A stretch of 64,000 nt of DNA, taken from the IMG/VR virus record IMGVR_UViG_3300044701_000569, positions 124,001-188,000 of that record; one strand, 5' to 3'. How positions within the stretch are numbered: the stretch's first letter is position 1; each line of letters starts with the position of its first letter. The position numbers were made by a program, and so were the translations under genes. This document shows, piece by piece, positions 35,233 to 60,646 of this stretch. The notes beneath the pieces were generated by a model. The model was not told where the DNA came from. It was given only the letters and a program-made list of their open reading frames with translations, and searched no databases.

Positions 35233-35239
35233 TTTACGA

Positions 35240-35245: not shown

Positions 35246-35274
35246 ATATAAAGCACTATTAGGGGTTATTACAG

Positions 35275-37741: not shown

Positions 37742-37749
37742 TATAAATA
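37742..37749 (+). promoter_or_regulatory. exact T4 late promoter TATAAATA inside an 8-bp inverted repeat (37735-37754)
   Basis: TAGAGTAT-ATAA-ATACTCTA, followed by TAGGGGTT and ATG 37771. Confidence 0.72.
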
Positions 37750-38793: not shown

Positions 38794-38868
38794 ATTAGAT
38801 AACATATTCAGTTTCTTACGACTTCAATCCATAAACTGACTATATAATTAAAACCCTTGGAGACTCTT

Positions 38869-39222
38869 ATGGACGAAAGATTAGAAAAAGCTCTTAAGTT
38901 TAGCAATTACATGGTTACGCTAAACAATCAAAAACGAGTCATTAAAGAAAAGTATTTTGAAGACCTCATGTACTTTAACAGTGGTTGCCAATTTACTGTT
39001 ACGAAAGAATTAATTACGTTTGTTGGTCTGTTAATAGAACGAGGTAATGACTCTGATGTTGTACTAACTGACGATAACGACATACCTGCTAAGATATCAG
39101 ATCTAGGTTCTTTTTATGATGACATCCTTAATATTTACTTTACAGCATCAAATACGTATTACACAAAATACGAAGAACTTAAGAAAAACAGAAAAATAGA
39201 AACTCTAGTAAACCATGAATAA
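38869..39222 (+). CDS. hypothetical protein, possibly a tail-fibre-assembly-associated small domain
   Basis: ATG 38869 follows GGAG (the track TTG start lies within the RBS). G..F.V...L...LTDDND.P..I.DL..F pattern is reminiscent of DUF4376-type domains (weak). Confidence 0.5.
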   Translation: MDERLEKALKFSNYMVTLNNQKRVIKEKYFEDLMYFNSGCQFTVTKELITFVGLLIERGNDSDVVLTDDNDIPAKISDLGSFYDDILNIYFTASNTYYTKYEELKKNRKIETLVNHE

Positions 39223-40072
39223 TTCAAGAGGCGTTGTTTTATTTGCTAGAAACAATGGCAAACTTGATTATGTTAAACAGGCTGTATTTCTAGCAAAGAG
39301 AATTAAGAAATATCTAAATTTACCAACAACTGTAATAACAGATAGTGCTGATTATTTAGAAAAAGCATTTGATACAAATATTTTTGATAAAATTATTACA
39401 GTTGAATATTCTGAAACTAAAAATAATAGAGCTTATTTTGACGGTTCATTGTTTCACAAAACTGCTCCATTTAAAAATGACATGCGAGACGGTGTCTACA
39501 ATTGGTCACCTTACGATGAAACAATCTTAATGGATACTGATTATATCATATGCAATGATCTACTATTAAAATGTTTTGAGTCAAACAATGATTTAATGCT
39601 GTTTAAAGATTCATACGACCTAGCTCATTTTAGAAATCAAGATGAATTCAAACACATTAGTGACTTTACTATAGATTTTTATTGGGCTACAGTTGTGTTC
39701 TTCAGAAAAACAGATGAGAATGAAGTCTTTTTTGATCTTATACGCCATATTAAAAAAGAATGGAATCACTATAGACGTGTCTATCAAATAGATTCAGGAT
39801 TGTTTAGAAATGATTTTGCGTTTAGCATAGCTGTTCATATTATGAATGGATTTTCTAAAGGGTCTTTTGTAGCACCTTTGCCGGGAAAACATTACTATAC
39901 TATTGATAGAGATATTCTACAGAGTCTCGATGAAGACAGTATGTTATTTTTAGTAGAAAAGAAAGATCATTTAGGCGAATATACACTAATAAGAACTGAA
40001 AAACAAAATATTCACGTTATGAATAAGTTTAGTTTGGAACGAGTAATTGATGAGGAGATGTCTAATGGATAA
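39215..40072 (+). CDS. GT-A fold glycosyltransferase (GT8-like), paralog of 40065
   Basis: GVVLFA, SPYDETILMDTDY (DxD), YWATVVFFRK, RNDFAFSIA, H.MNK. Confidence 0.7.
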   Translation: MNNSRGVVLFARNNGKLDYVKQAVFLAKRIKKYLNLPTTVITDSADYLEKAFDTNIFDKIITVEYSETKNNRAYFDGSLFHKTAPFKNDMRDGVYNWSPYDETILMDTDYIICNDLLLKCFESNNDLMLFKDSYDLAHFRNQDEFKHISDFTIDFYWATVVFFRKTDENEVFFDLIRHIKKEWNHYRRVYQIDSGLFRNDFAFSIAVHIMNGFSKGSFVAPLPGKHYYTIDRDILQSLDEDSMLFLVEKKDHLGEYTLIRTEKQNIHVMNKFSLERVIDEEMSNG

Positions 40073-40910
40073 GAGTAGAGGCATCTTAGTATTAGCTCAA
40101 AATTCTACAGTAGCAAATTATGTTGAACAGGCTGCACTTTTAGCTATGAGCCTTAAAGTTACAAACCCTAGCACACTTATAAGTGTAGTTACTAATGATG
40201 AAGTTCCTACAGAATATGTAAAACTGTTTGATAAGATTATTCCTATACCGTTTGAAGATGATGCAGACGCAACAGAATGGAAGATTGAAAATAGATGGAA
40301 GCTATATCACGCAACACCTTATGATCAAACAATGGTATTGGATACTGATATGCTGATCCTACAGGATATATCAAGTTGGTGGAAGTTTTTAGAAAATTAC
40401 AAATTATATTTTACAACTAAAGTTTTTACTTATAGGGGCGAAGAAGTTACTAACGACTTTTATAGAAAAACTTTTACATCTAACAATCTTCCTAATCTAT
40501 ATAGCGGACTTCATTATTTCGAAAAGAGTAAACTAGCACTAGAGTTTTATACTTGGCTTGAACTTGTTATGCAGAACTGGGAATTGTTCTACGGATTGTA
40601 TGCTAAAGAAAATTATCCTGGTAGATGCAGTGTAGATGTTAGTGCAGCAATCGTAGCTAAAATTCTTGATTGTGACTCTGAAATTACAAACAATTATGCA
40701 GAATTTCCTACTTTTACTCATATGAAACCTCATATACAGAATTGGATTAGACCTAATGAAAAATGGCAAAACTGTGTTGGAGTTTACATTAATAGAAATT
40801 GTGAAATTAAAATAGGAAATTTTTCTCAGTTAGGTATCTTACATTATACAGAAAAAGATTTTGTAACACCTGAATTAATTGAACGCTATAGGAATTACCT
40901 ACATGTCTAA
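40065..40910 (+). CDS. GT-A fold glycosyltransferase (GT8-like), paralog of 39215
   Basis: GILVLA, KIENRWKLYHATPYDQTMVLDTDM (DxD), FTHMKP, LHYTEK. ATG 40065 after GAGGAG preferred. Confidence 0.72.
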   Translation: MDKSRGILVLAQNSTVANYVEQAALLAMSLKVTNPSTLISVVTNDEVPTEYVKLFDKIIPIPFEDDADATEWKIENRWKLYHATPYDQTMVLDTDMLILQDISSWWKFLENYKLYFTTKVFTYRGEEVTNDFYRKTFTSNNLPNLYSGLHYFEKSKLALEFYTWLELVMQNWELFYGLYAKENYPGRCSVDVSAAIVAKILDCDSEITNNYAEFPTFTHMKPHIQNWIRPNEKWQNCVGVYINRNCEIKIGNFSQLGILHYTEKDFVTPELIERYRNYLHV

Positions 40911-42288
40911 TTTTGCCGATTTTTTAAAAACACTAAACATTGAAGTAGATGTTGTAGCCAATTCTTTTGTCTATTATGATCCTACAAACGGAAAAATAGA
41001 AAAAATAGGTAACAAATATGTCAAAGACGATTCGTTATCAATACTAGAAGTTCATCACAGCACTGTAACTGATATTATAAATGGTACTAAGAGTCCTGAT
41101 GATTTTATTGTAGAGTACGATGTAGCTTTAAAACAGTTAGCTCTAAAAGAGAAGACATACGAAGATAACAATTCTAAAATAGATACTAGCATGCATCGCT
41201 TGCCTGTAGTAAGAACAGTTTCAGATGAAGCAGGCGACAGAAGTTCTTTAATTTTTAACGGCATCTACGACGGTGTTGAAGTTTTTATGTGGATTAGCGG
41301 AACTAGATTTACAAAAGGTATGCTAGTTTGGTATAAGAATACTGTTTACAAACTGTTAGAAGATATCGAATTAGAAGAGTTTGACGAATCAAAGGCAGAC
41401 GTATTTGTAACTGATGTAGTTGTATCTAATATAAAAAGCATTAATCATTTTGTTGAATACAAAGTCATGTTTAAATCTATTTTTGAAGGTGTACACGTAG
41501 ATGTATGGTATAGAGACCTAGAACATTTACCAGGGCAGCATGTTTGGATTTACAACAATGTTTATAGAATTAGAGAACATCAATCAGCTGATACTTCTTT
41601 TAATTTAGAAAATGCAGAACTTGTTCTAAGCAATGTTTTGCTGTATGGAGATATTAACAAATCTTTAACATTTGTTTCTGTGCTTTCCCCAGGAGATAAA
41701 ATTTTAGATAATAACAGGCTGTATCTTTGCTTAGATGAAAAGCTAAACGCAAAGATGCAAGAAAAGTCAATTGTTTTTTATACTTCAAAATATCAAGGAC
41801 TGTTATATGACGAAGAATTAAAAACTCTTACAAAATTTTCCTTTACTGAAAAGCATAATAAACTTCTAGCAGACAATGAAAAAATAAAAGATACTATTGA
41901 GTTGCTTGATAATAGCACTATTGAAGATGGCGCAAAGGTATTAATTGGCAAAAATTTGTACCTAGCTACTAGATTAGAAGTACGAGATATTGATGTAAAT
42001 GTTGTTCAAAATAATTTATTAGGTTGCTGGGAAATTTACCTAGGTAAGAAGACCAAAAGAAGTCTTCAAAAAATTAGTTATGTAGGACAAGACACATTGT
42101 ATTTCAGTGTTACATCTAAGTACGATCCTAATATACTTTATAGAACAATGGAATTTTCTTTAAGCAAACTGTTAAACGATGTTTCACAAATTTATCCCTA
42201 TCAAAATGATTGGGAACGAACTAGAGAAGATGTAAGTGTATACACTTCTAAGTTTTTTGATACCTACTCTCATGAGGTACTAGAATGA
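40903..42288 (+). CDS. hypothetical protein with degenerate CBM5/12-like repeats
   Basis: WISGTRFTKGMLVWYKNTVYKL and WYRDLEHLPGQHVWIYNNVYRI repeats; ATG 40903 overlaps the upstream stop. Confidence 0.6.
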   Translation: MSNFADFLKTLNIEVDVVANSFVYYDPTNGKIEKIGNKYVKDDSLSILEVHHSTVTDIINGTKSPDDFIVEYDVALKQLALKEKTYEDNNSKIDTSMHRLPVVRTVSDEAGDRSSLIFNGIYDGVEVFMWISGTRFTKGMLVWYKNTVYKLLEDIELEEFDESKADVFVTDVVVSNIKSINHFVEYKVMFKSIFEGVHVDVWYRDLEHLPGQHVWIYNNVYRIREHQSADTSFNLENAELVLSNVLLYGDINKSLTFVSVLSPGDKILDNNRLYLCLDEKLNAKMQEKSIVFYTSKYQGLLYDEELKTLTKFSFTEKHNKLLADNEKIKDTIELLDNSTIEDGAKVLIGKNLYLATRLEVRDIDVNVVQNNLLGCWEIYLGKKTKRSLQKISYVGQDTLYFSVTSKYDPNILYRTMEFSLSKLLNDVSQIYPYQNDWERTREDVSVYTSKFFDTYSHEVLE

Positions 42289-43208
42289 GCCAAAAAATTA
42301 AAGTTGTTGATTATGACATCATATACCTATCCTATGATGAACCAAATGCCGAAAAAAATTATGCAGATTTGTGTAAAAAGATACCGTGGGCAAAACGTGT
42401 TCACGGTGTTAAAGGATCCGATGCAGCACACAAAGCCTGTGCTCGTCTAAGCGAAACTGATAGGTTCATCACAGTTGACGGTGACAATGTTGTTAGAGAA
42501 GAATTTTTAAATCAAGAAATTGATTTTGTTGAACACACAGATCTTACAAATTGTGTAATCAGTTGGAGCGGCCGCAATGCTATCAACGGGTTAATGTATG
42601 GTAACGGTGGATTAAAATGTTGGCCTAAAGATTTTGTTCTCAATATGAAAACACATGAAGCAGCGGATCCAACAAACAAACACGCACAGGTTGACTTTTG
42701 CTGGGATGTGCAGTATATTCAAATGAACAGTTGTTATTCAGATGTATACAACAATGCTACGCCTGCACAGGCTTGGAGAGCAGGTTTTAGAGAAGGAGTT
42801 AAACTAGCTCTTGATAGAGGAGTAAAACCTTCAAAGGAAGACTTTCTAAAAAATCATTGGCGTTGTTTGCATTGGCTTTATATTTGGACAATGGTCGGAA
42901 CTGATATTGAAAATGGTAAATGGGCAATACTAGGGGCTAGAGAGGGTCTTTATAAAACTATGCTTACTGAATGGGACTATGTAAACGTTCGTGATTTTGA
43001 ATACCTTAATGATCTTTGGGCTAAAGAATTTGAAGCAATGCAAGATTCTGACATTGATTCTAGAACTACATTTCTTGGACAAGAACTTAGTGAAAAACTA
43101 AGCATTCCTATAGGTGAAGTACTAACATCGGATCAAAGTAAATTTTTTAAAACAGTTTACGAGCATCCTGCTAGAACTGATCACCAAAGGTTTATTGAGC
43201 GCCTATGA
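42285..43208 (+). CDS. glycosyltransferase-like protein (GT-A, DGD motif), paralog of 56199
   Basis: YDIIYLSYDEPNAE..Y..L......KRVHGVKGSDAAHK.CA...TDRFITVDGDN, LMYGNGGLK, AWRAGFRE.VKL. Confidence 0.62.
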   Translation: MSQKIKVVDYDIIYLSYDEPNAEKNYADLCKKIPWAKRVHGVKGSDAAHKACARLSETDRFITVDGDNVVREEFLNQEIDFVEHTDLTNCVISWSGRNAINGLMYGNGGLKCWPKDFVLNMKTHEAADPTNKHAQVDFCWDVQYIQMNSCYSDVYNNATPAQAWRAGFREGVKLALDRGVKPSKEDFLKNHWRCLHWLYIWTMVGTDIENGKWAILGAREGLYKTMLTEWDYVNVRDFEYLNDLWAKEFEAMQDSDIDSRTTFLGQELSEKLSIPIGEVLTSDQSKFFKTVYEHPARTDHQRFIERL

Positions 43209-44599
43209 GCAAAAGCTATTACAATATTAATGCAGAAAATATTAGAGAAGAACTAGATAAAGTAAGTTGTTCTATGTGTCTTGCTAAATGGACACAAGTT
43301 ACTATGCATTTGCATAACGGACACACACATAGCTGTCATCATCCTGTTCCCCATAAGATTCCTCTAGAAGAACTACTAGAAAGTCCCCACGCACTACATA
43401 ATACACGTTTTAAAATTGAGCAGAGAGAAAAAATGCTTAAAGGTGAACGACCTAAAGAGTGCGACTACTGTTGGAATATAGAAGATTTAGGCAAAGACTA
43501 TCTCAGCGACAGACATTTTAAAAGCGGAGAATATTGGAGTTCAGAATACAAAGATGAAATTCTAAAAGACCCACTACGCAAGGATTTTCTTCCTACATAC
43601 CTAGAAGTTAGTTTTTCAAATGTTTGCAATTTTAGCTGCATGTATTGCAGTCCGCAGATTAGTTCAAAGTGGGTTGACGATGTTAAAAGAAATGGTCCTT
43701 ATGATCTAGGTGATTTTAAACATGCTGATTTAAGTTATTTAGATCAAAAAGGTTTAACTCCTATACCTGAAAGGGAAGACAATCCTTATATTGACGCATT
43801 TTGGGAAATATGGCCTGAGTTATATCAAAAACTTAGAGTGTTTAGAATTACTGGTGGAGAACCTTTACTAAGCAAACATACTTGGAGAATTCTAGAGTAT
43901 GTTCAAGCTAATCCTAATCCTAACATTGAAATAATTATCAATAGTAATTTGTGTGTGCAAGATAATTTTATTGATAGATTAATAAAAATAGGTAATGATC
44001 TTATTACTAATTCTAAGGTAAAAAGATTTGAAATCTACACCAGTGTTGAGAGTGAAGGACGCCAAGCTGAATATATACGTCCAGGATTAGATTACGACAA
44101 ATTTATAAACAATCTAATACGTGTGACTACTGAGATGCCAATGATTAAATGGCGTTCAAAAGTAGTAATTATGGCAACATATAATCTGTTGAGTATACCT
44201 AGATTTAGAAAACTACTTGAATGGTTATTAGAGTACAGAAAAACTCATTCAAACCCTCAATGGAAAAACATTTGGATTGATATTAGTTATCTTCGTTATC
44301 CTAGTTGGCAAACGGTTAGTCTAGCTGACGAAAGTATGCTAAAGATTATAGAATCTGATCTTGAATTTTTAAAAGCAAACGATCAAAATATTGTAGGTTG
44401 GCACGGATTTCAAGATACAGAAATTGAAAAGTTTGCTAGAATGTATAAGTATGCTGTTGAGTCAAGACAGAAGCTAAATCCTATAGAAAAAGAACGTTTT
44501 TACAATTTCTTTAACCAGCATGATCAACGCAAGGGTTTTAATTTTGTAGAGGTGTTTCCTGAGTTGGAAGAATTTTATAATGACTGTAGATCGAAGTAA
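43205..44599 (+). CDS. radical SAM enzyme with an N-terminal Cys/His-rich twitch-like domain
   Basis: CNFSCMYC (CxxxCxxC), ITGGEPLL, INSNL; N-terminal CLAKW...HSCHHP...CDYCW. Confidence 0.92.
   Translation: MSKSYYNINAENIREELDKVSCSMCLAKWTQVTMHLHNGHTHSCHHPVPHKIPLEELLESPHALHNTRFKIEQREKMLKGERPKECDYCWNIEDLGKDYLSDRHFKSGEYWSSEYKDEILKDPLRKDFLPTYLEVSFSNVCNFSCMYCSPQISSKWVDDVKRNGPYDLGDFKHADLSYLDQKGLTPIPEREDNPYIDAFWEIWPELYQKLRVFRITGGEPLLSKHTWRILEYVQANPNPNIEIIINSNLCVQDNFIDRLIKIGNDLITNSKVKRFEIYTSVESEGRQAEYIRPGLDYDKFINNLIRVTTEMPMIKWRSKVVIMATYNLLSIPRFRKLLEWLLEYRKTHSNPQWKNIWIDISYLRYPSWQTVSLADESMLKIIESDLEFLKANDQNIVGWHGFQDTEIEKFARMYKYAVESRQKLNPIEKERFYNFFNQHDQRKGFNFVEVFPELEEFYNDCRSK
43779..43807 (+). repeat. 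29-nt exact direct repeat, copy 1 (copy 2 at 45148-45176)
   Basis: acaatccttatattgacgcattttgggaa occurs identically in both adjacent rSAM paralogs (encodes NPYIDAFWE). Confidence 0.85.
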
Positions 44600-45917
44600 A
44601 CTTTCAGAATACCATTTAATACATCTAAAGAAAAGTGACGAGATTTCGTCTACTTTCTGTTCTGCTAAATGGCATATGGTTACCCTGCATCTTGCACAGG
44701 GAGAAACTCATAGTTGTTACCATCCGTGGACACACAAAGTTCCCCTAGAAGAATTAAAAAATAATCCAGGTGCAATACATAATACACTCTTTAAAAAGAG
44801 TCAACGTAAACTTATGCTCAATGGAGAACGTCCTAAAGAGTGTGAATACTGCTGGCGTATGGAAGATTTAGGTAATATCAGTGATAGAATAATTCGTAAT
44901 GCTGAACCTTATGCTAAAAATGACCTAGACACTTTTAAAACATACACTGGCGACGAGGATGTCTACCCGCGCCATGTAGAAGTGAGCTTTAGTACAACCT
45001 GTAATCTTAAATGTTCTTACTGTAATCCTACAGTAAGTTCTAAGTGGCTTGAAGAAGTTAATCAATATGGCGGTTATAAAACAAGTACTGAGTTTAATGA
45101 CTATATCAAACCAGGTAAACCTCTACCATTTATATTAGATAGAGAACACAATCCTTATATTGACGCATTTTGGGAATGGCTACCGGACGCATACCCTCAT
45201 ATGCATGTCCTTCGTGTCACTGGCGGTGAGCCTCTTATGAGTAAACACACGTTTACTCTGCTGGATTACATTGCTGAAAATCCTAATCCTAAACTAGAAG
45301 TTGTAGTTAACTCTAATATGTGTGTGCCTGATAAGCTGATTGATCAAGCTATAGCAGCAGGTAAAAAGATAGTAGAACGTGTGGGTGTATTTAAGATGTT
45401 TGCAAGTCTTGACAGCGTTGGTGCTCAAGCCGAATATCAACGTTACGGTTTAAATTTTGAACAGTTTACAAAAAATGTAAGACGTTTCTTAGATGAAATC
45501 CCCAACAGCAAAGTTTCATTTACTTGCACCTTTAATGTATTCAGTGTTCCTAATGTAAAAGGCTTTATGGAATATATGTATAGTTTACATAAAGATTACG
45601 GTAAGAGAATAAACTTTGACACACCGTATTTGCGTTTTCCACCACATCAGTGTGTACAGATATTGCCAAATGAGTATGTAAAATATTTAGAGGCTGCTGA
45701 AGAATACATGATAGAAAAGTCATTTCCTCAGCTTACAATTGACAAGATTCAACGATTAAAAAGTTATATGACAAATAAAACTTTTACAGAAGAACAGTTA
45801 TCTACGTACAGAAAAGACTTTGTTATATTTGTAGACGAACACGATAAACGCAGAGGAACAAATTTCTTAGAGACTTATCCTGAGCTAAAAGAATTTTACG
45901 AGTTGTGTAATGAATGA
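44580..45917 (+). CDS. radical SAM enzyme with an N-terminal twitch-like domain; tandem paralog of 43205
   Basis: CNLKCSYC, VTGGEPLM, VNSNM; N-terminal CSAKW...HSCYHP...CEYCW. Confidence 0.92.
   Translation: MTVDRSKLSEYHLIHLKKSDEISSTFCSAKWHMVTLHLAQGETHSCYHPWTHKVPLEELKNNPGAIHNTLFKKSQRKLMLNGERPKECEYCWRMEDLGNISDRIIRNAEPYAKNDLDTFKTYTGDEDVYPRHVEVSFSTTCNLKCSYCNPTVSSKWLEEVNQYGGYKTSTEFNDYIKPGKPLPFILDREHNPYIDAFWEWLPDAYPHMHVLRVTGGEPLMSKHTFTLLDYIAENPNPKLEVVVNSNMCVPDKLIDQAIAAGKKIVERVGVFKMFASLDSVGAQAEYQRYGLNFEQFTKNVRRFLDEIPNSKVSFTCTFNVFSVPNVKGFMEYMYSLHKDYGKRINFDTPYLRFPPHQCVQILPNEYVKYLEAAEEYMIEKSFPQLTIDKIQRLKSYMTNKTFTEEQLSTYRKDFVIFVDEHDKRRGTNFLETYPELKEFYELCNE
45148..45176 (+). repeat. 29-nt exact direct repeat, copy 2
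   Basis: Identical to 43779-43807. Confidence 0.85.
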
Positions 45918-50012: not shown

Positions 50013-50013
50013 T

Positions 50014-53720: not shown

Positions 53721-54547
53721 AAATGGAATTTTATAACAAAGATAATCTCACAGGGGTAATTGAAATAAAAGTGTTTGAAACCCAAACAGCAAAAACCTTT
53801 GTTGATGTTATTTCTAAAACTAACAAAACATCATCAACTACTAATCATAGTATTAGCAGAAATAAGATAGAAATTATTAACGATTTTCTTCGAATGAAAG
53901 AAGTTGTTAAACAGTATAATGATACCTCTTATGACAGAAAAATAGATGTTGATTTAGAAAAAGATTTTAGTTTACACAAACTTTTTGATTTACACGAACA
54001 CTTTGAACATTTAGGAGAACGCAAACGTTCTAATGATCCTACACTTAGTATTAAAGCATACAACGAAGTTATCAACATAGGTTGTGAATTAAACGGATTA
54101 ATTCATAAATTAGAAGGTAACTTATATGGAGGACAATGGTTACAGGCCCTATATAAAAAGCCAGACATTGTAAGAATTCCGTTAACCAAAGAAATAATAT
54201 CAGAAGCAGTGCCAGGTTATAGAAAAGATGTCCTATATGTTGGTTATGGAGAAACAGGCAAAAACATGGCACACATATTTCAAATGAATGAGCACGAATT
54301 ATTAGAAAGAAAGATGGTCCAACCTCAAAGATATATTTTAAGTGAATTCTTTTTGCCATTTAATGACATGCCTTTAGATTATGAAGGATATAAGAAATGG
54401 TGCATTAAACATGATGCAGCTGAAAAAGGTTACGACTACGAAAATCCTATTTGGTATGGAAAATGGGAAGTAGGCCAAATAGTTAAAAAATCGTTTAACA
54501 ACTTATCAAGTTTCCCTCAGTACGATACTATAAGGTTCGTTATATGA
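53717..54547 (+). CDS. hypothetical protein, paralog of 45910
   Basis: LFDLHEHFE, NGLIHKLE, GYGETGKNMAHIFQMNE, W, GKWEVGQI. Confidence 0.65.
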   Translation: MKMEFYNKDNLTGVIEIKVFETQTAKTFVDVISKTNKTSSTTNHSISRNKIEIINDFLRMKEVVKQYNDTSYDRKIDVDLEKDFSLHKLFDLHEHFEHLGERKRSNDPTLSIKAYNEVINIGCELNGLIHKLEGNLYGGQWLQALYKKPDIVRIPLTKEIISEAVPGYRKDVLYVGYGETGKNMAHIFQMNEHELLERKMVQPQRYILSEFFLPFNDMPLDYEGYKKWCIKHDAAEKGYDYENPIWYGKWEVGQIVKKSFNNLSSFPQYDTIRFVI

Positions 54548-55374
54548 GTAAGTTGGTAATTTTTGGAGATAGTTTTGCTGATAAAGTGTTAACACATATT
54601 CCAGAAGATAAACAAGCATGGTTTGAAATTTTATCTAAAAAGTTGAACAAAGATTTAGTAAGTTACGGATTAAACGGAACGTCTATTAGTTACTCTGTAT
54701 CTAAGTTGTTTGAATATCTTAATTCTCTTCAATACCATCCAGATGACATAATAGTTTTTGTAACATCTGCTCTAAGTAGATTGCCTCTAGTACACGATAA
54801 AATTGTTCCTAATTATGCATCAAAGTGGTTAATGTATTTAAATGGTGATTTGTCTAAAAAAGATAACGCATGGGCACACTTTCATCAGAACCATAATTTT
54901 TATAAAATGTATCATCAATTTTTTAATTACGAGCAAGTAAAGCAACAAAAAATAGGCATTGCATTGACATTAAAAGGATTACCTAATTTAACTGTAATAC
55001 TGTCAGCATTTGAAGATGTAACTGAAGGATTAATAGATGATCGATTAGATTTATTAAAAAATGATACCAACTTTATTTTAATAAATGCAAAATTATTTCA
55101 AATTAGTGAAGCAGAGTTTGCTCCAACAGGCACAACATATGTTAACTTTACTGATTTTTTTGGAGGAGAATGCAGACATTGCCATTTATCAAATTCTAAT
55201 AATCAAGAATTAGCAGATCAATTATATAATTGTATAACACATCAAAGTAATAACTATTTTAATAAAGACAATTTTAAAAAGCATTTTATTCCGCTTGATT
55301 ACACACAGACTGAAATATTAAATAAAGAATTGTTATCACTTTGGGGTAGAGGAGTTAAAAAATATAATGTCTAA
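54544..55374 (+). CDS. SGNH/GDSL-hydrolase-fold protein (possible O-acyl esterase or transferase), tandem copy 1
   Basis: LVIFGDSFAD (block I), GLNGTS (block II), terminal HCHLSNSNN (block V His). Confidence 0.72.
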   Translation: MSKLVIFGDSFADKVLTHIPEDKQAWFEILSKKLNKDLVSYGLNGTSISYSVSKLFEYLNSLQYHPDDIIVFVTSALSRLPLVHDKIVPNYASKWLMYLNGDLSKKDNAWAHFHQNHNFYKMYHQFFNYEQVKQQKIGIALTLKGLPNLTVILSAFEDVTEGLIDDRLDLLKNDTNFILINAKLFQISEAEFAPTGTTYVNFTDFFGGECRHCHLSNSNNQELADQLYNCITHQSNNYFNKDNFKKHFIPLDYTQTEILNKELLSLWGRGVKKYNV

Positions 55375-56197
55375 ATTGGTAATTTTTGGCGATAGCTTTG
55401 CAGATAGAATACGCCTTACAAAAAATTATAATTCTGTAGTATGGTATGAATTACTAGCAGATCGATTAAATTTGCAACTTCACCACTACGGAATGAACGG
55501 AACTTCTATAGAATATTCTATTTTAAAACTATATCAATATTTAAATTCTGATAATTATTCAACAGACGATGTTATCATCTTTGTGTGTACTAGCAGTACA
55601 AGAGTTCCTTTAGTTCACGAAAATCTTAATCCTAAATATGCAGCGCATTGGTTAAAGTTTTTACAAGGCGAACTAGTAAATAGCGCCGAGAAAGATTTAG
55701 TTAATCATTATCAGAAAAACAATTTATTTTATAAAACATTGTTTTCATTTTTTAATTACGATTTAGCTCAAACACAAAAGAGTCATGCCGCATTATTGCT
55801 AAAAACACTACCAAATACCGCAGTAATTATGACTGCATTTGACGACATACTTGCTATTAAACCTAATAGAAACGTTCTTAACGATACAGATAATTTTTTA
55901 TTAATAAACGCTAATCTATTTGCTATTTCAACTAACGAATTTGCTGAAGGTCTTAAATACGACACTTTTAGAAATTTTTTTAAAGGAGAAGTAAGAAATT
56001 CTCATTTAGGAACAACTAATAATAATATACTTGCTCAACAGTTATACAACTGTATTAAAAATAAATCAAGCAAGTATTTTATAAAAGAAGAATATAAAAA
56101 AAATTATATAAAATTAGAAATAAACAATACTACAAAAGAAATTTATGACTACGAGTTAGTTAAAATTTGGCGAGAAAATTTAAGATTAGAAGATTAG
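55367..56197 (+). CDS. SGNH/GDSL-hydrolase-fold protein, tandem copy 2
   Basis: Identical first 13 aa MSKLVIFGDSFAD, GMNGTS, RNSHLGTTNN. Confidence 0.72.
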   Translation: MSKLVIFGDSFADRIRLTKNYNSVVWYELLADRLNLQLHHYGMNGTSIEYSILKLYQYLNSDNYSTDDVIIFVCTSSTRVPLVHENLNPKYAAHWLKFLQGELVNSAEKDLVNHYQKNNLFYKTLFSFFNYDLAQTQKSHAALLLKTLPNTAVIMTAFDDILAIKPNRNVLNDTDNFLLINANLFAISTNEFAEGLKYDTFRNFFKGEVRNSHLGTTNNNILAQQLYNCIKNKSSKYFIKEEYKKNYIKLEINNTTKEIYDYELVKIWRENLRLED

Positions 56198-56198
56198 T

Positions 56199-56882
56199 AT
56201 GTACGACATTGTATTCATAAGCTATCAAGAACCTAACGCTGAAAAAAATTGGGAAAATCTTAAGTCAAGATTTTCTACGGCTAAAAGAGTGCATGGTATA
56301 AAAGGCATACATCAAGCACACATTGCTGCGGCTAAAAAGTGTTTTACAAAGATGTTTTGGGTAGTTGATGGCGACGCAGAAATTTTAGACACTTTTGATT
56401 TTAATTATACAGTGCCTGAGTGGGAGTTAGAAACAGTACATGTTTGGCGCAGTAAAAATCCTATAAACGATTTAGTTTATGGTTATGGGGGTGTAAAACT
56501 ATTACCTCAGCGATTGACTAAAAACATGGATATATCTAAACCAGATATGACTACAAGCATATCGTCATATTTTCGAGCAATGCCTGACGTTTCAAACATT
56601 ACGGCATTCAACACAGATCCATTTAACACATGGAAAAGCGCATTTAGAGAATGTGCTAAATTAGCAAGTAAAACTATAATCAGACAAAACGAGGATGAAA
56701 CAAATGAAAGGCTGCAAATTTGGCAGAATGTTGGACAGGACAGACCTTTTGGAGAATATGCTATTCGGGGTGCTTACAGCGGCAGTAATTTTGGTAATTT
56801 ACATAGGGGTATCCCAGATGTCTTAAAACAGATAAACGACTTTGATTGGCTAGAGGAACAGTTTCGTGCAGAAAATTTCTAA
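56199..56882 (+). CDS. glycosyltransferase-like protein (GT-A, DGD motif), paralog of 42285
   Basis: YDIVFISYQEPNAE..W..L.....KRVHGIKGIHQAH..AA....FWVVDGDA, LVYGYGGVKL, TWKSAFRECAKL. Confidence 0.62.
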   Translation: MYDIVFISYQEPNAEKNWENLKSRFSTAKRVHGIKGIHQAHIAAAKKCFTKMFWVVDGDAEILDTFDFNYTVPEWELETVHVWRSKNPINDLVYGYGGVKLLPQRLTKNMDISKPDMTTSISSYFRAMPDVSNITAFNTDPFNTWKSAFRECAKLASKTIIRQNEDETNERLQIWQNVGQDRPFGEYAIRGAYSGSNFGNLHRGIPDVLKQINDFDWLEEQFRAENF

Positions 56883-57939
56883 CATACGCCAGGTTCATAT
56901 AGAACTAACAGACAAGTGCCAAGCACAATGTCCTATGTGTGCTAGAAATTTTCACGGGGGTCCTACTAGACCGTTTATAAAAAACGGTGACATTTCTATT
57001 GAACAGTTTAAGGAATGGTTTCCAAAAGCATTTTTATCTCAGCTAACAAACTTTTATAGTTGTGGGAATTATGGTGATCCTGCTTTTGCAAAAGATTGTT
57101 TAGAAATATATTCATATGTTCGAGAATGTAATCCAACTACACGTCTAGCTCTGCATACAAACGGAGGAATGAGGAATCCAGATTGGTGGAGTAAACTAGC
57201 AAAGGTTTTAGGATCTTCTGCTAACTCAGAAGTTGTCTTTGCTGTAGACGGATTTAAAGACAAGCACGAATTATATCGCAGAAATACAAATTTTGATAAA
57301 GTTATAGAAAACATGACAGCATTTATCGAAGCTGGCGGCCGAGCAAGGGTTGACAGTCTAGTATTTGCACACAACGAGCACGATGTAGAGGAACTAGAAC
57401 AATATTTAAATAATCTAGGTGTTGATAATGTAAATTTTGTTAGTACAACACGATTTTATGAAATGGATTCTTTTCCTGTACACGATTTAGACAATCGTCA
57501 TGTGTATGATTTAAAACCAGCACAGCGAATAGAATTTAAAAGAAATCCTAATAATGCTTTGGATCAATTAGTAGACCAACAGTTTAGAGATAAAGTAATT
57601 GGTGCTGCTGAAATATCACCTCTTTGTGTATCTGAACAGGGTATATACGTTGATCCTTACGGAAACATTCTGCCCTGCTGCTGGATAGGCAGTGATTATC
57701 TAGAAGAACCAATAGAAGAAATTTTGCCAATACATTATTTAAGAAATTTAAGTGTACAAAATACAAAGAACATGCTTAAAGATATAACAGTACCTAATTG
57801 TCAAGATAAGGTACTTTACAATTCGTCGGATGTTTTGTGGTCTAAACTGTCAGATTATTGGACAGGAGAAAACAAATGTATGACCTGTGTAAAGGTCTGT
57901 TCAAAGGCTTTGTATAATAGTAGAAAGAATAATGAATAA
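56866..57939 (+). CDS. radical SAM enzyme with a C-terminal twitch/SPASM-like domain
   Basis: HIELTDKCQAQCPMCAR; CGNYGDP in place of GGEP; HTNGG; C-terminal PLC..EQGIYVDPYG.ILPCCW...CMTCVKVC. GTG start after GAGGA. Confidence 0.9.
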   Translation: MQKISNIRQVHIELTDKCQAQCPMCARNFHGGPTRPFIKNGDISIEQFKEWFPKAFLSQLTNFYSCGNYGDPAFAKDCLEIYSYVRECNPTTRLALHTNGGMRNPDWWSKLAKVLGSSANSEVVFAVDGFKDKHELYRRNTNFDKVIENMTAFIEAGGRARVDSLVFAHNEHDVEELEQYLNNLGVDNVNFVSTTRFYEMDSFPVHDLDNRHVYDLKPAQRIEFKRNPNNALDQLVDQQFRDKVIGAAEISPLCVSEQGIYVDPYGNILPCCWIGSDYLEEPIEEILPIHYLRNLSVQNTKNMLKDITVPNCQDKVLYNSSDVLWSKLSDYWTGENKCMTCVKVCSKALYNSRKNNE

Positions 57940-58915
57940 TTTTCAAAATATACCCTGGCAAAACATAAAGCAGTTTGGCCAACAAACAATGCTACAGAAT
58001 CCTCTGTTCACTGTGTCTTGGATACTAGCAAGATTCTGTAATTACAACTGTTCTTATTGTTGGCCTTATGCTAGATCCAGCACTCCCGACCATCAAACTT
58101 TAGAAACTTATATTAAAACAATGGATAGTATCAAAGAGCAGGCTCGAAATAATGGATTTACAAACTTTCATTTTAGTTTTAGCGGAGGAGAACCGACTGC
58201 TTATAAACAGTTTGGAGACCTTATTGAACATTATGCAAGTGATGCATTACCTGACTATCAAAGTATACACATGACAACTAACTTATCGCCAGGTAGTAAG
58301 TGGTGGAGTAAATGGTTAGAAGCTACTAGTACATTACATAGAAAAAGTATTACAGCTAGTTTCCATGCTGAACATGCACAAGAACAGGAATTTGGAGATA
58401 AGTGTCTACAATTAATGAATGCCGGAGTATTTGTAACCATAAATCAAGTTATGGTTCCTTCGCAGTTTTATGATCTTTATGCTAGGTGCGAACGATTTGT
58501 AGAAAGAGGTATTAATGTTACTCTTAAACCGCAGAGTGATCCTACTGCTAGTTTTGTAGTTAACGGTTATACTGAAGATCAAATACATAAGATGCAGACA
58601 GGATTCCCACAGAAGTGGTTAGGTGAAGAGGTTTCACAAGTAGAACTTCAGGACTATGAGGGTAATAAATATTACATCGATCAAGCTGAACGGTTTAACG
58701 CATTTGGATTTAATAAATTTAAAGGTTGGCTTTGCAATGCAGGATACCAAGGTATTGTAATAAGAGAAAATGAAGTAAAAAGAAGTTATAGTTGTAAAGA
58801 TGTTCCGATTGGTACACTTGAAAACGGTTTTACAATTTTTGATAGCCCAACAGTATGTATTAGTGAATCGTGTGTTAGTAGCGCAGACAGCAAAATTCCT
58901 AAAAGGAGAAATTAA
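57932..58915 (+). CDS. radical SAM enzyme with a C-terminal Cys-rich auxiliary domain
   Basis: WILARFCNYNCSYC, FSGGEPT, MTTNLS; C-terminal GWLCNAG...SYSC...CISESCVSSAD. Confidence 0.9.
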   Translation: MNNFQNIPWQNIKQFGQQTMLQNPLFTVSWILARFCNYNCSYCWPYARSSTPDHQTLETYIKTMDSIKEQARNNGFTNFHFSFSGGEPTAYKQFGDLIEHYASDALPDYQSIHMTTNLSPGSKWWSKWLEATSTLHRKSITASFHAEHAQEQEFGDKCLQLMNAGVFVTINQVMVPSQFYDLYARCERFVERGINVTLKPQSDPTASFVVNGYTEDQIHKMQTGFPQKWLGEEVSQVELQDYEGNKYYIDQAERFNAFGFNKFKGWLCNAGYQGIVIRENEVKRSYSCKDVPIGTLENGFTIFDSPTVCISESCVSSADSKIPKRRN

Positions 58916-59460
58916 TGTTTAAAGAAGTAGCAATAGATTATGATTTTAGTATTTTTCTAAATGCTGATTACAATCAACACGAAGGTAGCTGTGTTAAACA
59001 CCAAGTATACGAACTAACAGACATTCATGAAAAGTTTGGAGGATTTCCTAACACTTTCTGTCTAGAAAATACTAAAATACATCAACTTTGGTGGACGGCT
59101 GATAATATAGACTTTAGCAGACTAGGCAGTCAACTTGGTATGGAGATTATTACAGTTAGTTCAATACTTCAACCTCCTGGCAATGTAATTCCGCTACACA
59201 GAGATACATTCTTTCAAATTAAAAAGAGATATCCTGACGATACTAGAAAAAAGGTTAGAGCTAATATGTATCTAGAAGATTGGAAAGTTGGACACATCAT
59301 TCAATATAGTAAAGATTCGGATTCTAACGAATGGGCCAACCATACACACTGGAAAGCTGGTCAAGGTTTATTATGGGATGAATCTATCCTTCATATTGGC
59401 GCAAACATAGGGTTACAAAACAAGTATACTCTACAGATATCCGGCTTTTTAAATGAATAA
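58915..59460 (+). CDS. 2OG-Fe(II) dioxygenase (AspH/LpxO-like cupin fold)
   Basis: QPPGNVIPLHRD (HxD), W..G.GLLWDESILHIGAN (distal His), KYTLQISG; AGGAG RBS. Confidence 0.75.
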   Translation: MFKEVAIDYDFSIFLNADYNQHEGSCVKHQVYELTDIHEKFGGFPNTFCLENTKIHQLWWTADNIDFSRLGSQLGMEIITVSSILQPPGNVIPLHRDTFFQIKKRYPDDTRKKVRANMYLEDWKVGHIIQYSKDSDSNEWANHTHWKAGQGLLWDESILHIGANIGLQNKYTLQISGFLNE

Positions 59461-60646
59461 AATAGTTCTATGGTACGATGATTTGCATAAAAGTAACTGT
59501 AGTTATGCGGATGCTGTCTACCCTACTAGAACTATTGTCAACAAATTAAACACTAATAAAATAGAATTTTCTATAAAACATCTAGGTGATCCTGTTGATC
59601 ACTCAGATACAAATGTTTACATTATTGAATTGTTGAATGTCTATATCGACTATGACATTTTCTCTTTAATTACAGAAGAAACAAAAGAGTTACTAAGACA
59701 AAATGTAAAATTAGTACTCTATTACCCAAGAGAAGGTCATGCGTTTGATAATTGGCTATTAAACATTTATAAAAATCTTAAAAAACATAATCTGTTAACA
59801 AATAAAATTTTCTTTGCATACGGTGATAACGAATTTGTAGAAAATTATTTAACATATATCAAAGAGCACAATATTGAAGATTTTTTAATCCCAATATTGT
59901 TTGATTTTTATAAAGGTGACTATTATGAAAACGCTAATTGTTTTAACAGATCCCTTAGTCACAAAAGAAAATTTGATTATTTGTTTTATAATGGAAAGAT
60001 AAGACCACATAGGCTATACGCAGTTGCTGAATTAAAGCATCGTCAAATTTTAAATAACGGTCTAGTAAGCCTAATTGGATCAAAACATACGATAGGTCAT
60101 TATGAAATAGATGAGTGTTTAAAAATACTAACAGAAAATAATTGCTGTCATTCTTATATAAAAGAATTTGCAAACAATTGGTCATCGTTAGTTCTTGATA
60201 CTGATAATAACAATTTTTCTCAAAACGCAGTTTACAATAATGCAATTAATCATTATTCCTCAACTTTTTTTAGTGTAATAAGTGAAACAGGGTTAGTATA
60301 TAGATTTATTACAGAAAAGATTTATAAACCTATGGCAAATTTACATCCGTTTATTCTTATAGGACCACCAAATATGTTAAGTTTATTAAGATCTAAAGGA
60401 TATAAGACATTTCCTGAAATGTTTAATGAATCATATGATAGTGAATTAGATCCTGTTAAACGAATTAACTTAGTTTTAGACGAGATAGAAAAATTTGCTA
60501 ATCTACCTACTGAAGAAAAACAAGAAAAATTTAAATCTATTAAAGACAAATTAGAATTTAATAAATCTCTATATATAAAAACTGCAAGGGATTCTAAAGC
60601 TAAAGATTTTATTGATATGTTTAAAACGATAGGTAATACAAAATGA
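59453..60646 (+). CDS. putative GT-B glycosyltransferase with a GT10-like TEK motif; paralog of 52494
   Basis: YLFYNGKIRPHR; FSVISETG..YRFITEKIYKPM..LHPFILIGPPN.L..L...GYKTF..MFNESYD. Confidence 0.5.
   Translation: MNKIVLWYDDLHKSNCSYADAVYPTRTIVNKLNTNKIEFSIKHLGDPVDHSDTNVYIIELLNVYIDYDIFSLITEETKELLRQNVKLVLYYPREGHAFDNWLLNIYKNLKKHNLLTNKIFFAYGDNEFVENYLTYIKEHNIEDFLIPILFDFYKGDYYENANCFNRSLSHKRKFDYLFYNGKIRPHRLYAVAELKHRQILNNGLVSLIGSKHTIGHYEIDECLKILTENNCCHSYIKEFANNWSSLVLDTDNNNFSQNAVYNNAINHYSSTFFSVISETGLVYRFITEKIYKPMANLHPFILIGPPNMLSLLRSKGYKTFPEMFNESYDSELDPVKRINLVLDEIEKFANLPTEEKQEKFKSIKDKLEFNKSLYIKTARDSKAKDFIDMFKTIGNTK

What the first reader, a model, noticed from the sequence alone, without database searches (positions are those of the whole stretch)
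39215..60646. Almost every accessory enzyme type in the cluster occurs as a pair
Seen: GT8-like x2 (39215/40065), DGD-type GT x2 (42285/56199), unknown family x2 (45910/53717), TEK-type GT x2 (52494/59453), SGNH x2 (54544/55367), His-rich twitch rSAM x2 (43205/44580). Inference: two parallel sub-pathways (two sugars, two acceptor proteins, or initiation versus extension), heterodimeric enzymes, or an old segmental duplication later reshuffled.
Basis: partly seen in the sequence, partly recalled or inferred. Interest (0 to 1): 0.6.

Follow-up and report, generated by a model that had tools for sequence, protein, structure and literature searches.

The report
Paired sugar-transfer enzymes in a giant phage
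A 357-kb T4-like phage carries, next to its tail-fibre genes, a 25-kb block of sugar-transferring and radical-SAM enzymes in which the six reported enzyme pairs are real but of very different ages, and only two of them are ancient partner pairs kept together in hundreds of phages.

Summary
All six pairs are homologous. Five show it by direct comparison. The sixth (45910/53717) shows it only profile against profile (hhalign 94.9%, E 4e-8).

They are not one event. Synonymous sites are saturated, there are no DNA repeats, and the copy order is not colinear, so a block duplication is not supported.

Only two pairs are fixed. GT8-like a/b and the long and short 'DGD' GT-A enzymes occur 1:1 in about 80 related phage loci (at least 582 IMG/VR stretches) and in Ralstonia phage RsoM2USA. 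Each pair splits into two clean clades.
- The DGD pair is adjacent in 15 loci and fused into one protein in six.
- It brackets a cassette of 0 to 13 genes, the largest being here.
- The GT8 genes overlap in 75 of 78 loci.
- A complex model supports a GT8 heterodimer (0.63 against control 0.06).

The other pairs vary in copy number between phages. TEK-type runs from 0 to 5, SGNH-like 0 to 2, and N-terminal-twitch rSAM 0 to 7, of which 7 are in this genome.

Best reading: a soluble, modular glycan-building and tailoring island in the host-recognition region, with hetero-partner transferases. The target, probably a virion protein, is inferred. A DGD plus rSAM plus methyltransferase sub-module also sits in Bdellovibrionota chromosomes.

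The parts
36778..37719 (+). P36a: non-enzymatic-looking protein with an N-terminal helical bundle and a C-terminal beta-sandwich. It is the first gene of the conserved core and a paralogue of 37771.
   Evidence: AF2 pLDDT 88.1. No convincing PDB relative. Present in 72 of the related loci. 36% identical to 37771.
37771..38763 (+). P36b: tandem paralogue of P36a. A TATAAATA motif lies 22 nt upstream of its ATG.
   Evidence: Copy number is 1-3 in relatives.
38857..39222 (+). Small conserved core protein of about 117-121 aa. The real start is probably the ATG at 38869.
   Evidence: Orthologues in 75 loci and in RsoM2USA_354.
39215..40072 (+). GT8-like glycosyltransferase a, with invariant D107/D109 (DxD).
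40065..40910 (+). GT8-like glycosyltransferase b, with invariant D99/D101. It overlaps the stop of GT8a.
   Evidence: The family profile hits glycogenin-1 at E 2.7e-6..
40879..42288 (+). 469-aa protein of unknown function with internal W/Y-rich repeats. It is a facultative core member, present in 51 loci.
42285..43208 (+). DGD-long: GT-A fold transferase that forms the left border of the variable cassette.
   Evidence: AF2 model. Foldseek hit to A64R at E 4.9e-4. VIA Z 9.9. Trees.
43205..44599 (+). N-terminal-twitch radical SAM (NF033640), His-rich sub-clade, copy 1.
   Evidence: 314.7 bits against a cut-off of 170. Tree.
44580..45917 (+). N-terminal-twitch radical SAM, His-rich sub-clade, copy 2.
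   Evidence: 337.5 bits. 40% identical to 43205.
45910..46770 (+). Unknown family A, with conserved N95, H98, R99, H140, E143, G197, K198, D206 and D208. It is a remote homologue of 53717.
   Evidence: Fused to an Asp/Arg beta-hydroxylase domain in P0043.
46763..47719 (+). Short radical SAM (S family) with a Cys-rich C-terminal domain.
47716..49032 (+). N-terminal-twitch radical SAM.
   Evidence: 316.1 bits
49014..50012 (+). S-family radical SAM, circularly permuted so that the Cys-rich domain is N-terminal.
50002..51297 (+). N-terminal-twitch radical SAM.
   Evidence: 343.2 bits
51290..52504 (+). N-terminal-twitch radical SAM.
   Evidence: 299.5 bits
52494..53720 (+). TEK-type protein 1. It shares a C-terminal ~110-aa domain with 59453 but has a different N-terminal domain.
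   Evidence: Three tandem copies in L091.
53717..54547 (+). Unknown family B, a remote homologue of 45910.
54544..55374 (+). SGNH/GDSL-like protein 1, with invariant G8-D9-S10 and H214.
55367..56197 (+). SGNH/GDSL-like protein 2, a tandem paralogue (46% identity).
56199..56882 (+). DGD-short: GT-A type transferase that forms the right border of the variable cassette.
56866..57939 (+). Singleton radical SAM, weakly like BlsE or the tungsten-cofactor maturase. Conserved next to 57932 in phages and in Bdellovibrionota.
57932..58915 (+). S-family radical SAM.
58915..59460 (+). 181-aa protein with an HxD...H pattern. A cupin or 2OG-oxygenase fold is my reading of the sequence and was not tested.
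59453..60646 (+). TEK-type protein 2.
   Evidence: Atlas: viral clusters only, with the nearest named family Glyco_transf_10 at 0.80-0.81. A structural neighbour is fused to an epimerase/GDP-mannose dehydratase.
60643..61251 (+). Putative SAM-dependent methyltransferase (weak Pfam match), conserved after DGD-short.
61248..62660 (+). N-terminal-twitch radical SAM. Its closest cellular relatives (47-51% identity) are in Bdellovibrionota.
   Evidence: 397.5 bits..
62657..63655 (+). S-family radical SAM. The cluster continues beyond the window on the minus strand.

Best explanation
The region is a modular enzyme island inside the tail-fibre (host-recognition) part of a 357-kb T4-like phage.

Shown:
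- The core is conserved: P36 beta-sandwich protein, small protein, GT8-like a, GT8-like b, (40879), DGD-long, then DGD-short.
- Both transferase pairs in the core are ancient paralogues, always inherited together.
- The space between DGD-long and DGD-short is a hot spot. Cassettes of radical SAM enzymes, TEK-type proteins, SGNH-like proteins and others are gained, lost and duplicated there.
- This phage has the largest cassette seen, so several families happen to stand at two copies.

Inferred:
- The two fixed pairs work as hetero-partners. GT8a with GT8b forms a heterodimer. DGD-long with DGD-short forms a two-domain unit. Each member keeps its own active DxD site, so each pair performs two different transfers.
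- The whole island builds and tailors a glycan in the cytoplasm, by epimerisation or oxidation-type radical chemistry, methylation, and O-acyl handling.
- The likely target is a virion protein of the fibre region, with P36 the prime candidate. Glycan variety would then track cassette variety.
For: Phage and context:
- T4-like gene content and genome size.
- Tail-collar and G2-chaperone fibre genes lie upstream. An Mtd_N fibre-like gene and an Asp/Asn hydroxylase lie downstream.

Conserved core:
- Found in at least 582 IMG/VR stretches, mapped in 80 loci, and present in RsoM2USA.

Ancient pairs:
- The GT8 and DGD trees each split into two clades with support 1.0, one member of each per locus.
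- Orthologues in RsoM2USA (37-45% identity) are closer than the paralogues are to each other (28-35%).
- The split between DGD-long and DGD-short also contains Bdellovibrionota sequences on both sides.

Coupling:
- The gap between DGD-long and DGD-short is 0 bp in 15 loci.
- Six one-ORF fusions exist.
- GT8a and GT8b overlap in 75 of 78 loci.
- The complex score is 0.63 (runs 0.00, 0.63, 0.64) against a best control of 0.06. That mark was reached by 58 of 80 solved complexes and 2 of 110 mismatched pairs. Partner pLDDT is at least 85, and the runs agree in at least 0% of contacts.
- DxD is invariant in all four.

Variable cassette:
- It holds 0 to 13 genes.

Sugar chemistry:
- The GT8b profile hits glycogenin.
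- DGD has a GT-A fold, and its best Foldseek hit is the PBCV-1 capsid glycosyltransferase A64R.
- An NAD-dependent sugar epimerase/dehydratase sits in the relative L091.
- A TEK-type structural neighbour is fused to an epimerase/GDP-mannose dehydratase.
- A genuine GT2 sits beside the module in a Bdellovibrionales chromosome.

Soluble pathway:
- No protein has a transmembrane segment.
Against: - No acceptor is shown. P36 has no recognised fold relative and no proteomic evidence as a virion or glycosylated protein. The RsoM2USA paper identified only ten bands, and ORF355 is not among them.
- No Pfam, PHROG or NCBIfam model reaches any of the putative transferases or the SGNH-like proteins.
- The GT-A fold is shared with nucleotidyltransferases at similar Z.
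- One of the three complex runs scored 0.00. GT8 homodimers such as glycogenin are solved, so the pass may reflect family likeness, and a homodimer control was not run.
- The substrates of the N-terminal-twitch rSAM family are unknown.
- The Bdellovibrionota module shows that part of the chemistry is not tied to virions.
Confidence: 0.6

Rival explanations
1. An old segmental (block) duplication of a half-cluster, later reshuffled, produced the pairs together.
For: Several families stand at exactly two copies genome-wide. There is a loose order of DGD, then rSAMs, then TEK in both halves.
Against: - The dispersed pairs are interleaved and not colinear.
- dN ranges from 0.52 to 0.82 and pS is saturated.
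- There are no DNA repeats.
- The DGD pair is adjacent or fused in many relatives.
- 45910 is absent where 53717 is present.
- Copy numbers of TEK, SGNH and rSAM vary independently.
- S-family rSAM best matches do not pair across the two halves.
Confidence: 0.04
2. The island is an auxiliary gene set that remodels the host cell surface (LPS or O-antigen) during infection to block superinfection. This reading was proposed for GT8 genes in pelagimyophage host-recognition clusters.
For: The literature proposes this reading (PMC7029224). The GT8 family includes LPS core transferases (general knowledge). A homologous sub-module lies in Bdellovibrionota chromosomes next to envelope-related genes such as MlaC and DsbA-VKOR.
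Against: - The roughly 40 proteins include no membrane protein, flippase, polymerase, ligase or lipid-carrier transferase.
- The genes run on directly from the upstream fibre and structural-type genes on the same strand with almost no gaps; their timing was not measured.
- The island is strictly linked to the P36 protein.
Confidence: 0.17
3. The enzymes make a soluble small molecule, such as an aminoglycoside-like, nucleoside-like or sugar-derived metabolite, rather than decorating a macromolecule.
For: - Twitch-type rSAM enzymes of known function act on small sugar substrates (BtrN, by general knowledge).
- 56866 is weakly similar to BlsE, at E 2.5e-10 and below the cut-off.
- All proteins are soluble.
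- The module also occurs in predatory bacteria.
Against: - No scaffold-forming enzyme was recognised.
- The island is tightly embedded in the fibre module with a non-enzymatic beta-sandwich protein.
- Four to six glycosyltransferase-like proteins is a high number for a small metabolite.
Confidence: 0.1
4. The radical SAM enzymes are peptide or protein maturases (RiPP-like cross-linking or epimerisation) acting on P36 or fibre proteins, with the transferases secondary.
For: Weak sub-threshold similarity to SPASM peptide maturases. Asp/Asn beta-hydroxylase domains, which modify proteins, are linked to the cluster.
Against: - All peptide-maturase hits lie far below their cut-offs, whereas NF033640 is far above its cut-off.
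- No precursor-peptide gene or recognition domain was seen.
- Sugar-nucleotide enzymes co-occur with the cluster.
Confidence: 0.07
5. The transferases glycosylate phage DNA bases, as the T4 alpha and beta glucosyltransferase pair does.
For: The phage is T4-like, and a pair of transferases recalls T4 a-gt/b-gt (general knowledge).
Against: - The fold is GT-A or GT8-like, not the GT-B fold of the T4 enzymes.
- The island sits in the fibre and structural-gene block.
- The module occurs in bacterial chromosomes next to a GT2.
- Hydroxymethyl-base genes were not examined.
Confidence: 0.04

Closest known systems
Host-recognition cluster of pelagimyophages and cyanomyophages (Zaragoza-Solas et al. 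2020, PMC7029224). T4-like marine genomes with up to 12 radical SAM genes were also noted by Nishimura et al. 2017 (PMC5332604).
   Same: A hypervariable region around the tail-fibre genes of T4-like aquatic phages that holds GT8-type transferases and radical SAM cassettes differing between close relatives.
   Different: - Those papers give no gene-level anatomy.
- This work defines a fixed core with two co-inherited paralogue pairs, and the cassette insertion point between DGD-long and DGD-short.
- It also finds the DGD fusions and the link to Bdellovibrionota.
- The genome here is a 357-kb jumbo phage, and the core also occurs in a soil Ralstonia phage.
Virus-encoded glycosylation of virion proteins: the chlorovirus PBCV-1 A64R machinery and mycobacteriophage capsid and tail-tube glycosylation (Freeman et al. 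2023, cited in PMC12801897).
   Same: GT-A type transferases encoded beside structural genes. A64R is the best Foldseek match of DGD-long.
   Different: The match is weak (E 4.9e-4, TM about 0.3, N-terminal domain only). No glycan or acceptor is shown here. No known virion glycosylation system carries a dozen radical SAM enzymes.
Glycogenin / CAZy family GT8
   Same: N-terminal nucleotide-sugar binding half with DxD. The family profile hits glycogenin-1 at E 2.7e-6. Glycogenin works as a dimer.
   Different: Pfam Glyco_transf_8 does not reach either protein, and only about 100 residues align. Here two diverged paralogues are always paired rather than one protein forming a homodimer.
NCBIfam NF033640, N-terminal twitch domain radical SAM proteins
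   Same: Six window proteins score 300-398 bits against a cut-off of 170, with CxxxCxxC and the N-terminal Cys-rich domain.
   Different: The family has no assigned reaction. Seven paralogues in one phage genome, plus a His-rich sub-clade, is unusual.
T4 alpha- and beta-glucosyltransferases (a pair of phage transferases acting on one substrate)
   Same: Two transferases of one phage that act on the same polymer with different outcomes. This is a functional analogy for a fixed pair.
   Different: The T4 enzymes have a different fold (GT-B), a different target (DNA), and are not adjacent paralogues.

Membership tests
GT8 glycosyltransferases (39215, 40065) | Match to the family model (Pfam PF01501) above threshold | tested here: not met
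   No Pfam family at E <= 0.01 for either protein. No NCBIfam or PHROG annotation.
GT8 glycosyltransferases (39215, 40065) | Sequence relationship to a solved GT8 enzyme that includes the DxD nucleotide-sugar site | tested here: met
   The 40065 family profile hits glycogenin-1 at E 2.7e-6 over residues 3-104, ending at the DTD motif. 39215 is homologous to 40065 but has no PDB hit of its own. DxD is invariant in both.
GT-A fold glycosyltransferases (42285, 56199) | Rossmann-like GT-A fold with an acidic DxD motif at the end of a beta-strand | tested here: met
   The AF2 model has pLDDT 88.6. VIA gives Z 9.9, rmsd 3.1, 140 aa to B4GALNT1, and Z 9-10 to other GT-A enzymes. Foldseek hits A64R at E 4.9e-4. 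D65-G-D67 is invariant in both paralogues. Nucleotidyltransferases score Z 8.8, so the fold alone does not prove transferase chemistry.
GT10-type fucosyltransferases (52494, 59453, 'TEK') | Match to Glyco_transf_10 or a fold match to a solved GT10 enzyme | tested here: inconclusive
   No Pfam hit and no PDB profile hit. In the Atlas the nearest named clusters are Glyco_transf_10 at 0.80-0.81, which the tool rates as a lead only. No structure was predicted here.
SGNH/GDSL hydrolases (54544, 55367) | Blocks I-V with catalytic Ser (GDS), Gly, Asn and the Asp-x-x-His dyad | tested here: inconclusive
   GDS (8-10) and H214 are invariant, but no DxxH is present; E209 lies five residues before the His. 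No Pfam or PDB hit. The Atlas model resembles viral clusters in which 10-19% of members carry Lipase_GDSL or DUF6071, at TM 0.61-0.65.
N-terminal twitch radical SAM (NF033640) | Score above the curated cut-off, a CxxxCxxC SAM cluster, and an N-terminal auxiliary Cys-rich domain | tested here: met
   Scores of 299-398 bits against 170 for 43205, 44580, 47716, 50002, 51290 and 61248. Pfam finds SPASM N-terminal to Radical_SAM. The Cys residues are invariant.
Obligate heteromeric enzyme pair (GT8a/b; DGD-long/short) | Strict co-occurrence, gene fusion in some genomes, and a physical complex | tested here: inconclusive
   Co-occurrence is 1:1. There are six DGD fusions. The GT8 complex model scores 0.63 against control 0.06, with one of three runs at 0.00.

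The most novel reading that the evidence does not exclude
The island is a virion-glycan diversity generator. A fixed heteromeric transferase core primes a dedicated beta-sandwich fibre protein. A swappable cassette of up to 13 radical SAM enzymes then rewrites the sugars, giving phages an O-antigen-like variable coat at the host-recognition end. The same DGD, rSAM and methyltransferase toolkit is used by predatory Bdellovibrionota, which suggests a shared chemistry for recognising or evading prey and hosts.
Probability: 0.2. Interest if true: 0.85.

Novelty: new variant of a known kind. Interest (0 to 1): 0.6.

Why it matters
- Radical-SAM-rich transferase islands are common in uncultured aquatic T4-like phages (at least 582 contigs here) and have no assigned function.
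- Two transferase pairs are fixed, coupled and sometimes fused, and they bracket the variable cassette. This turns a list of hypothetical genes into a testable unit.
- It gives a defined core to express (GT8a with GT8b, DGD-long with DGD-short), a candidate acceptor (P36), and one cultured carrier (RsoM2USA ORF347-355).
- It offers a route to the unknown chemistry of the N-terminal-twitch rSAM family.
- The same sub-module in Bdellovibrionota chromosomes gives a second, genetically tractable setting.

Tried and rejected
- Pfam, PHROGs and NCBIfam on all putative transferases, the SGNH-like proteins and the unknowns gave nothing.
- Megablast of the region against the phage collection gave no match. 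tblastn found only RsoM2USA.
- PDB profile searches were blank or chance-level for DGD, GT8a, TEK, P36 and SGNH-like.
- For 45910 against 53717, Smith-Waterman with shuffles (Z 1.2) and profile against single sequence (1.5%) were negative. I had first taken the pair as unsupported. The exhaustive search supplied a second profile and reversed that.
- Single-protein scans of viral contigs for 45910 and 53717 found only a 100%-identical copy on another IMG/VR contig.
- As a T4-type late promoter, TATAAATA occurs only 8 times in the genome, 4 of them upstream of ORFs, so I do not rely on it.
- The sigma-70 promoter and terminator scans were at chance level.
- The alignment of all N-twitch paralogues was too divergent for a collection scan, so a sub-family alignment was used instead.
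- The P36 fold searches gave only generic beta-sandwich likenesses, with Z no higher than 7.
- A complex model of DGD-long with DGD-short, and homodimer controls for GT8a/b, could not be run because the cap is one job.

Full report
WHAT THE WINDOW IS

The window is bases 124001-188000 of a 357,559-bp virus record that is rated complete.
- Its gene content is T4-like: a gp55-type late sigma factor, an SbcD/gp47 homologue, a gp5-type hub lysozyme, gp6-type and gp25/53-type wedge proteins, and a 5131-aa structural giant.
- From 31284 to 36768 lie fibre-type genes with a tail-collar domain and a peptidase-G2 intramolecular chaperone domain.
- From 36778 to 63655 run 27 ORFs on the plus strand, almost all with overlapping stop and start codons.
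- Beyond the window the cluster continues convergently on the minus strand. It holds two more radical SAM genes, an Asp/Asn beta-hydroxylase and an Mtd_N fibre-like protein.

CHECK OF THE OBSERVATION

All six pairs are homologous.
- Five pairs are plain in BLASTP, phmmer and shuffled Smith-Waterman tests.
  - GT8-like: 28% identity, E 2e-11.
  - DGD: 35% identity, E 1.6e-30.
  - His-rich twitch rSAM: 40% identity, E 2e-117.
  - TEK: 34% identity, but only over the C-terminal 90 aa, E 2e-13.
  - SGNH-like: 46% identity, E 2e-80.
- The 'unknown family' pair 45910/53717 shows nothing pairwise (Z 1.2). A profile against the single sequence gave 1.5%.
- The word search found almost no relatives of 45910.
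- The exhaustive search found 100 relatives.
- With profiles on both sides, hhalign gives 94.9%, E 4.2e-8 over 250 columns. Four motifs line up: LN.LHR, VH..E, GK and G.PIG.
- Family HMMs run over the whole genome give exactly two members each for GT8-like, DGD, TEK and P36, and one member each for the profile-linked families of 45910 and 53717. SGNH-like has two plus one weak third copy.

Three qualifications apply.
- The rSAM 'pair' is a sub-clade of a seven-member family, NF033640, with scores of 300-398 bits against a cut-off of 170.
- A second, shorter rSAM family has five members.
- Five genes are singletons.

ARE THE LABELS RIGHT?

- GT8-like: the profile of the 40065 family hits glycogenin-1 at E 2.7e-6, up to the DxD motif.
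- DGD: an AF2 model (pLDDT 88.6) has a GT-A N-terminal domain.
  - Foldseek's best match is the PBCV-1 capsid glycosyltransferase A64R, E 4.9e-4.
  - VIA gives Z 9.9, rmsd 3.1, 140 aa to B4GALNT1.
  - Nucleotidyltransferases follow at Z 8.8.
- TEK-type: only an Atlas lead to Glyco_transf_10 at 0.80-0.81. A structural neighbour is fused to a sugar epimerase/dehydratase.
- SGNH-like: GDS and one His are invariant, but there is no canonical DxxH. The Atlas structural neighbours are partly annotated as GDSL.
- No curated model reaches any of these proteins.

ONE DUPLICATION OR MANY?

The pairs do not come from one event.
- Synonymous differences are saturated in every pair (pS 0.61-0.70). dN runs from 0.52 for SGNH-like to 0.82 for TEK.
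- The only DNA repeats are motif patches of 81 nt or less.
- The three dispersed pairs are interleaved rather than colinear.

Comparative data settle the question.
- A scan of IMG/VR with a DGD alignment found at least 582 stretches, of which 80 loci were fetched.
- Mapping all cluster proteins on those loci shows a fixed order: P36 (1-3 copies), small protein, GT8a, GT8b, (40879), DGD-long, [variable cassette], DGD-short. This is usually followed by the methyltransferase and a 56866-type rSAM.
- Ralstonia phage RsoM2USA, the only isolate found, has the same order in ORF355 to ORF347.
- GT8a and GT8b are 1:1 in 78 of 81 loci.
- DGD-long and DGD-short are 1:1 wherever the downstream part is present.
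- The trees of both families split into two clean clades with support 1.0.
- The RsoM2USA orthologues (37-45% identity) are closer than the paralogues are to each other.

The gap between DGD-long and DGD-short varies widely.
- It is 0 bp in 15 loci.
- It is about 1.3 kb, holding one N-twitch rSAM, in 11 loci.
- It reaches up to 9.2 kb elsewhere.
- Here it is 12,991 bp with 13 genes, the largest seen.

So the DGD pair is an old tandem pair pushed apart by insertions, not the two ends of a block duplication.

The other pairs are not fixed.
- N-twitch rSAM runs from 0 to 6 per fetched locus.
- TEK runs from 0 to 2.
- The closest cassette relative, L091, has three tandem 52494-type copies plus two weak 59453-type copies.
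- L091 has one SGNH-like gene, one 53717 homologue and no 45910 homologue.
- In the N-twitch tree, 43205 and 44580 each have closer orthologues in other phages than they are to one another.

HOW THE FIXED PAIRS PROBABLY WORK

- All four proteins keep the DxD motif invariant, so neither member of a pair is a dead partner.
- DGD-long and DGD-short are fused into a single ORF of 516-538 aa in six contigs: L070, L085, L087, L088, L148 and L156. This is classic evidence that two proteins act together.
- GT8a's stop overlaps GT8b's start by 4-29 nt in 75 of 78 loci.
- The complex test on the two family alignments gave 0.63 (runs 0.00, 0.63, 0.64) against a best control of 0.06.
  - That mark was reached by 58 of 80 solved complexes and by 2 of 110 mismatched pairs.
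  - Partner pLDDT is at least 85, and the runs agree in at least 0% of contacts.
  - This supports binding but does not show it. Because GT8 homodimers are known, the pass may reflect family likeness.
- My reading is that each fixed pair is a two-site hetero-unit performing two different transfers.

WHAT THE ISLAND DOES

The enzyme content points to sugar chemistry.
- It holds GT8-like, GT-A, possibly GT10-like, methyltransferase and SGNH-like proteins.
- A sugar epimerase/dehydratase sits in the relative L091.
- A genuine GT2 sits beside the homologous module in a Bdellovibrionales chromosome.
- No protein has a membrane segment. The pathway is therefore cytoplasmic and lacks everything needed to assemble or export an envelope polysaccharide by itself.

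The island lies inside the fibre module and always starts with P36.
- P36 is a helical-bundle plus beta-sandwich protein with no enzyme-like features and no known relative.

I therefore favour glycosylation and radical tailoring of a virion protein, with the cassette setting the glycan's structure. This step is inferred. Rival targets (host LPS, a soluble metabolite, peptide maturation, DNA) are listed in the rival explanations, each with its odds.

A LINK OUTSIDE PHAGES

- The closest cellular relatives of rSAM 61248 (47-51% identity) are in Bdellovibrionota, on contigs of up to 3 Mb.
- Those loci carry homologues of 61248, 56866, 57932, 60643 and 56199, sometimes also 42285, all together.
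- In one chromosome the module is flanked by ordinary genes: VKOR-DsbA, MlaC, a multicopper oxidase and DedA.
- In a joint tree the deepest split is DGD-long type against DGD-short type, with bacterial and phage sequences on both sides. The DGD duplication therefore predates the exchange between phages and these bacteria.
- GT8a/b and P36 are absent from four closed Bdellovibrionota genomes. They occur only on one 140-kb contig of a fifth, so that part of the core appears phage-specific.

COMPARISON WITH THE LITERATURE

- Pelagimyophage genomes were reported to have a hypervariable host-recognition cluster with GT8 transferases and radical SAM cassettes. The authors read it as host O-chain modification (PMC7029224).
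- A T4-like marine genome with 12 radical SAM genes was noted in passing (PMC5332604).
- I found no paper describing the fixed core, the paired paralogues, the fusions or the Bdellovibrionota module. The library covers open-access papers only.

VERDICT

- The block-duplication reading fails.
- The hetero-partner reading is supported for the two fixed pairs.
- For the other four pairs the count of two is a feature of this genome.
- The function is a reasoned inference that can be tested in RsoM2USA or in Bdellovibrio.

Noticed in passing
window 49014-50012: This radical SAM is a circular permutation of the short (S) rSAM family. The Cys-rich domain is C-terminal in 46763, 57932 and 62657 but N-terminal here. 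BLAST aligns residues 4-104 to 62657 residues 227-332, and residues 130-324 to 46763 residues 8-199. The result has the same domain order as the N-terminal-twitch family.
   Followed up: partly
L126:5452-11350 and about 60 other loci L098-L175: Bdellovibrionota chromosomes carry a compact module of homologues of 56866, 57932, a GT2, 56199 and 61248, often with 60643 as well. In L126 it is flanked by housekeeping and envelope genes. Phages and predatory bacteria therefore share this toolkit.
   Followed up: partly
P0043 (1012 aa), a relative of window 45910-46770: This is a natural fusion of a 45910-type domain (residues 12-283) with an Asp/Arg beta-hydroxylase domain (residues 332-502). A separate Asp/Asn beta-hydroxylase gene lies just beyond the window at L095:6699-7355 (minus strand).
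   Followed up: partly
L091:14564-17437: A 957-aa ORF has a partial DGD-like N-terminus, several weak partial repeats of the same segment, and a complete DGD-short domain at its C-terminus. The same contig has three tandem 52494-type genes and a sugar epimerase/dehydratase.
   Followed up: partly
window 15256-30651: A single 5131-aa ORF lies between the baseplate wedge gene and the fibre genes. RsoM2USA has a 2541-aa structural protein in the equivalent place.
   Followed up: no
window 37742-37749 and whole genome: TATAAATA, the T4 late-promoter core, is strongly depleted: 2 in the window against 12.6 expected, and 8 in 357 kb. One copy sits 22 nt upstream of the ATG of 37771. Four of the eight lie within 60 nt upstream of an ORF.
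   Followed up: partly
window 40879-42288: The 469-aa protein contains four spaced repeats of a G..VW.YNN.VY-like motif. They resemble small carbohydrate-binding repeats of fibre proteins. This is my reading of the sequence and no model matched it.
   Followed up: no
L089, L090 (IMGVR_UViG_3300031857_007934, 156,456 bp): A second IMG/VR contig from another sample encodes 45910 and 53717 at 100% identity, so the same phage was assembled independently.
   Followed up: no
window 46763-51297, 56866-58915, 61248-63655; G000 187636-189850: Every S-family rSAM gene sits directly beside an rSAM of another type (N-twitch or 56866-type). The 56866-57932 adjacency is conserved in phages and in Bdellovibrionota. 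This may indicate hetero-typic rSAM partnerships, or it may be chance in so dense a cluster.
   Followed up: no
L096, L097, L135, L144, L146, L149, L152 (MAG contigs labelled archaeal, Chloroflexota, Rickettsiales and others): Contigs binned into unrelated marine MAGs carry phage-like runs of these rSAM and DGD genes. They look like phage fragments mis-binned into cellular genomes.
   Followed up: no
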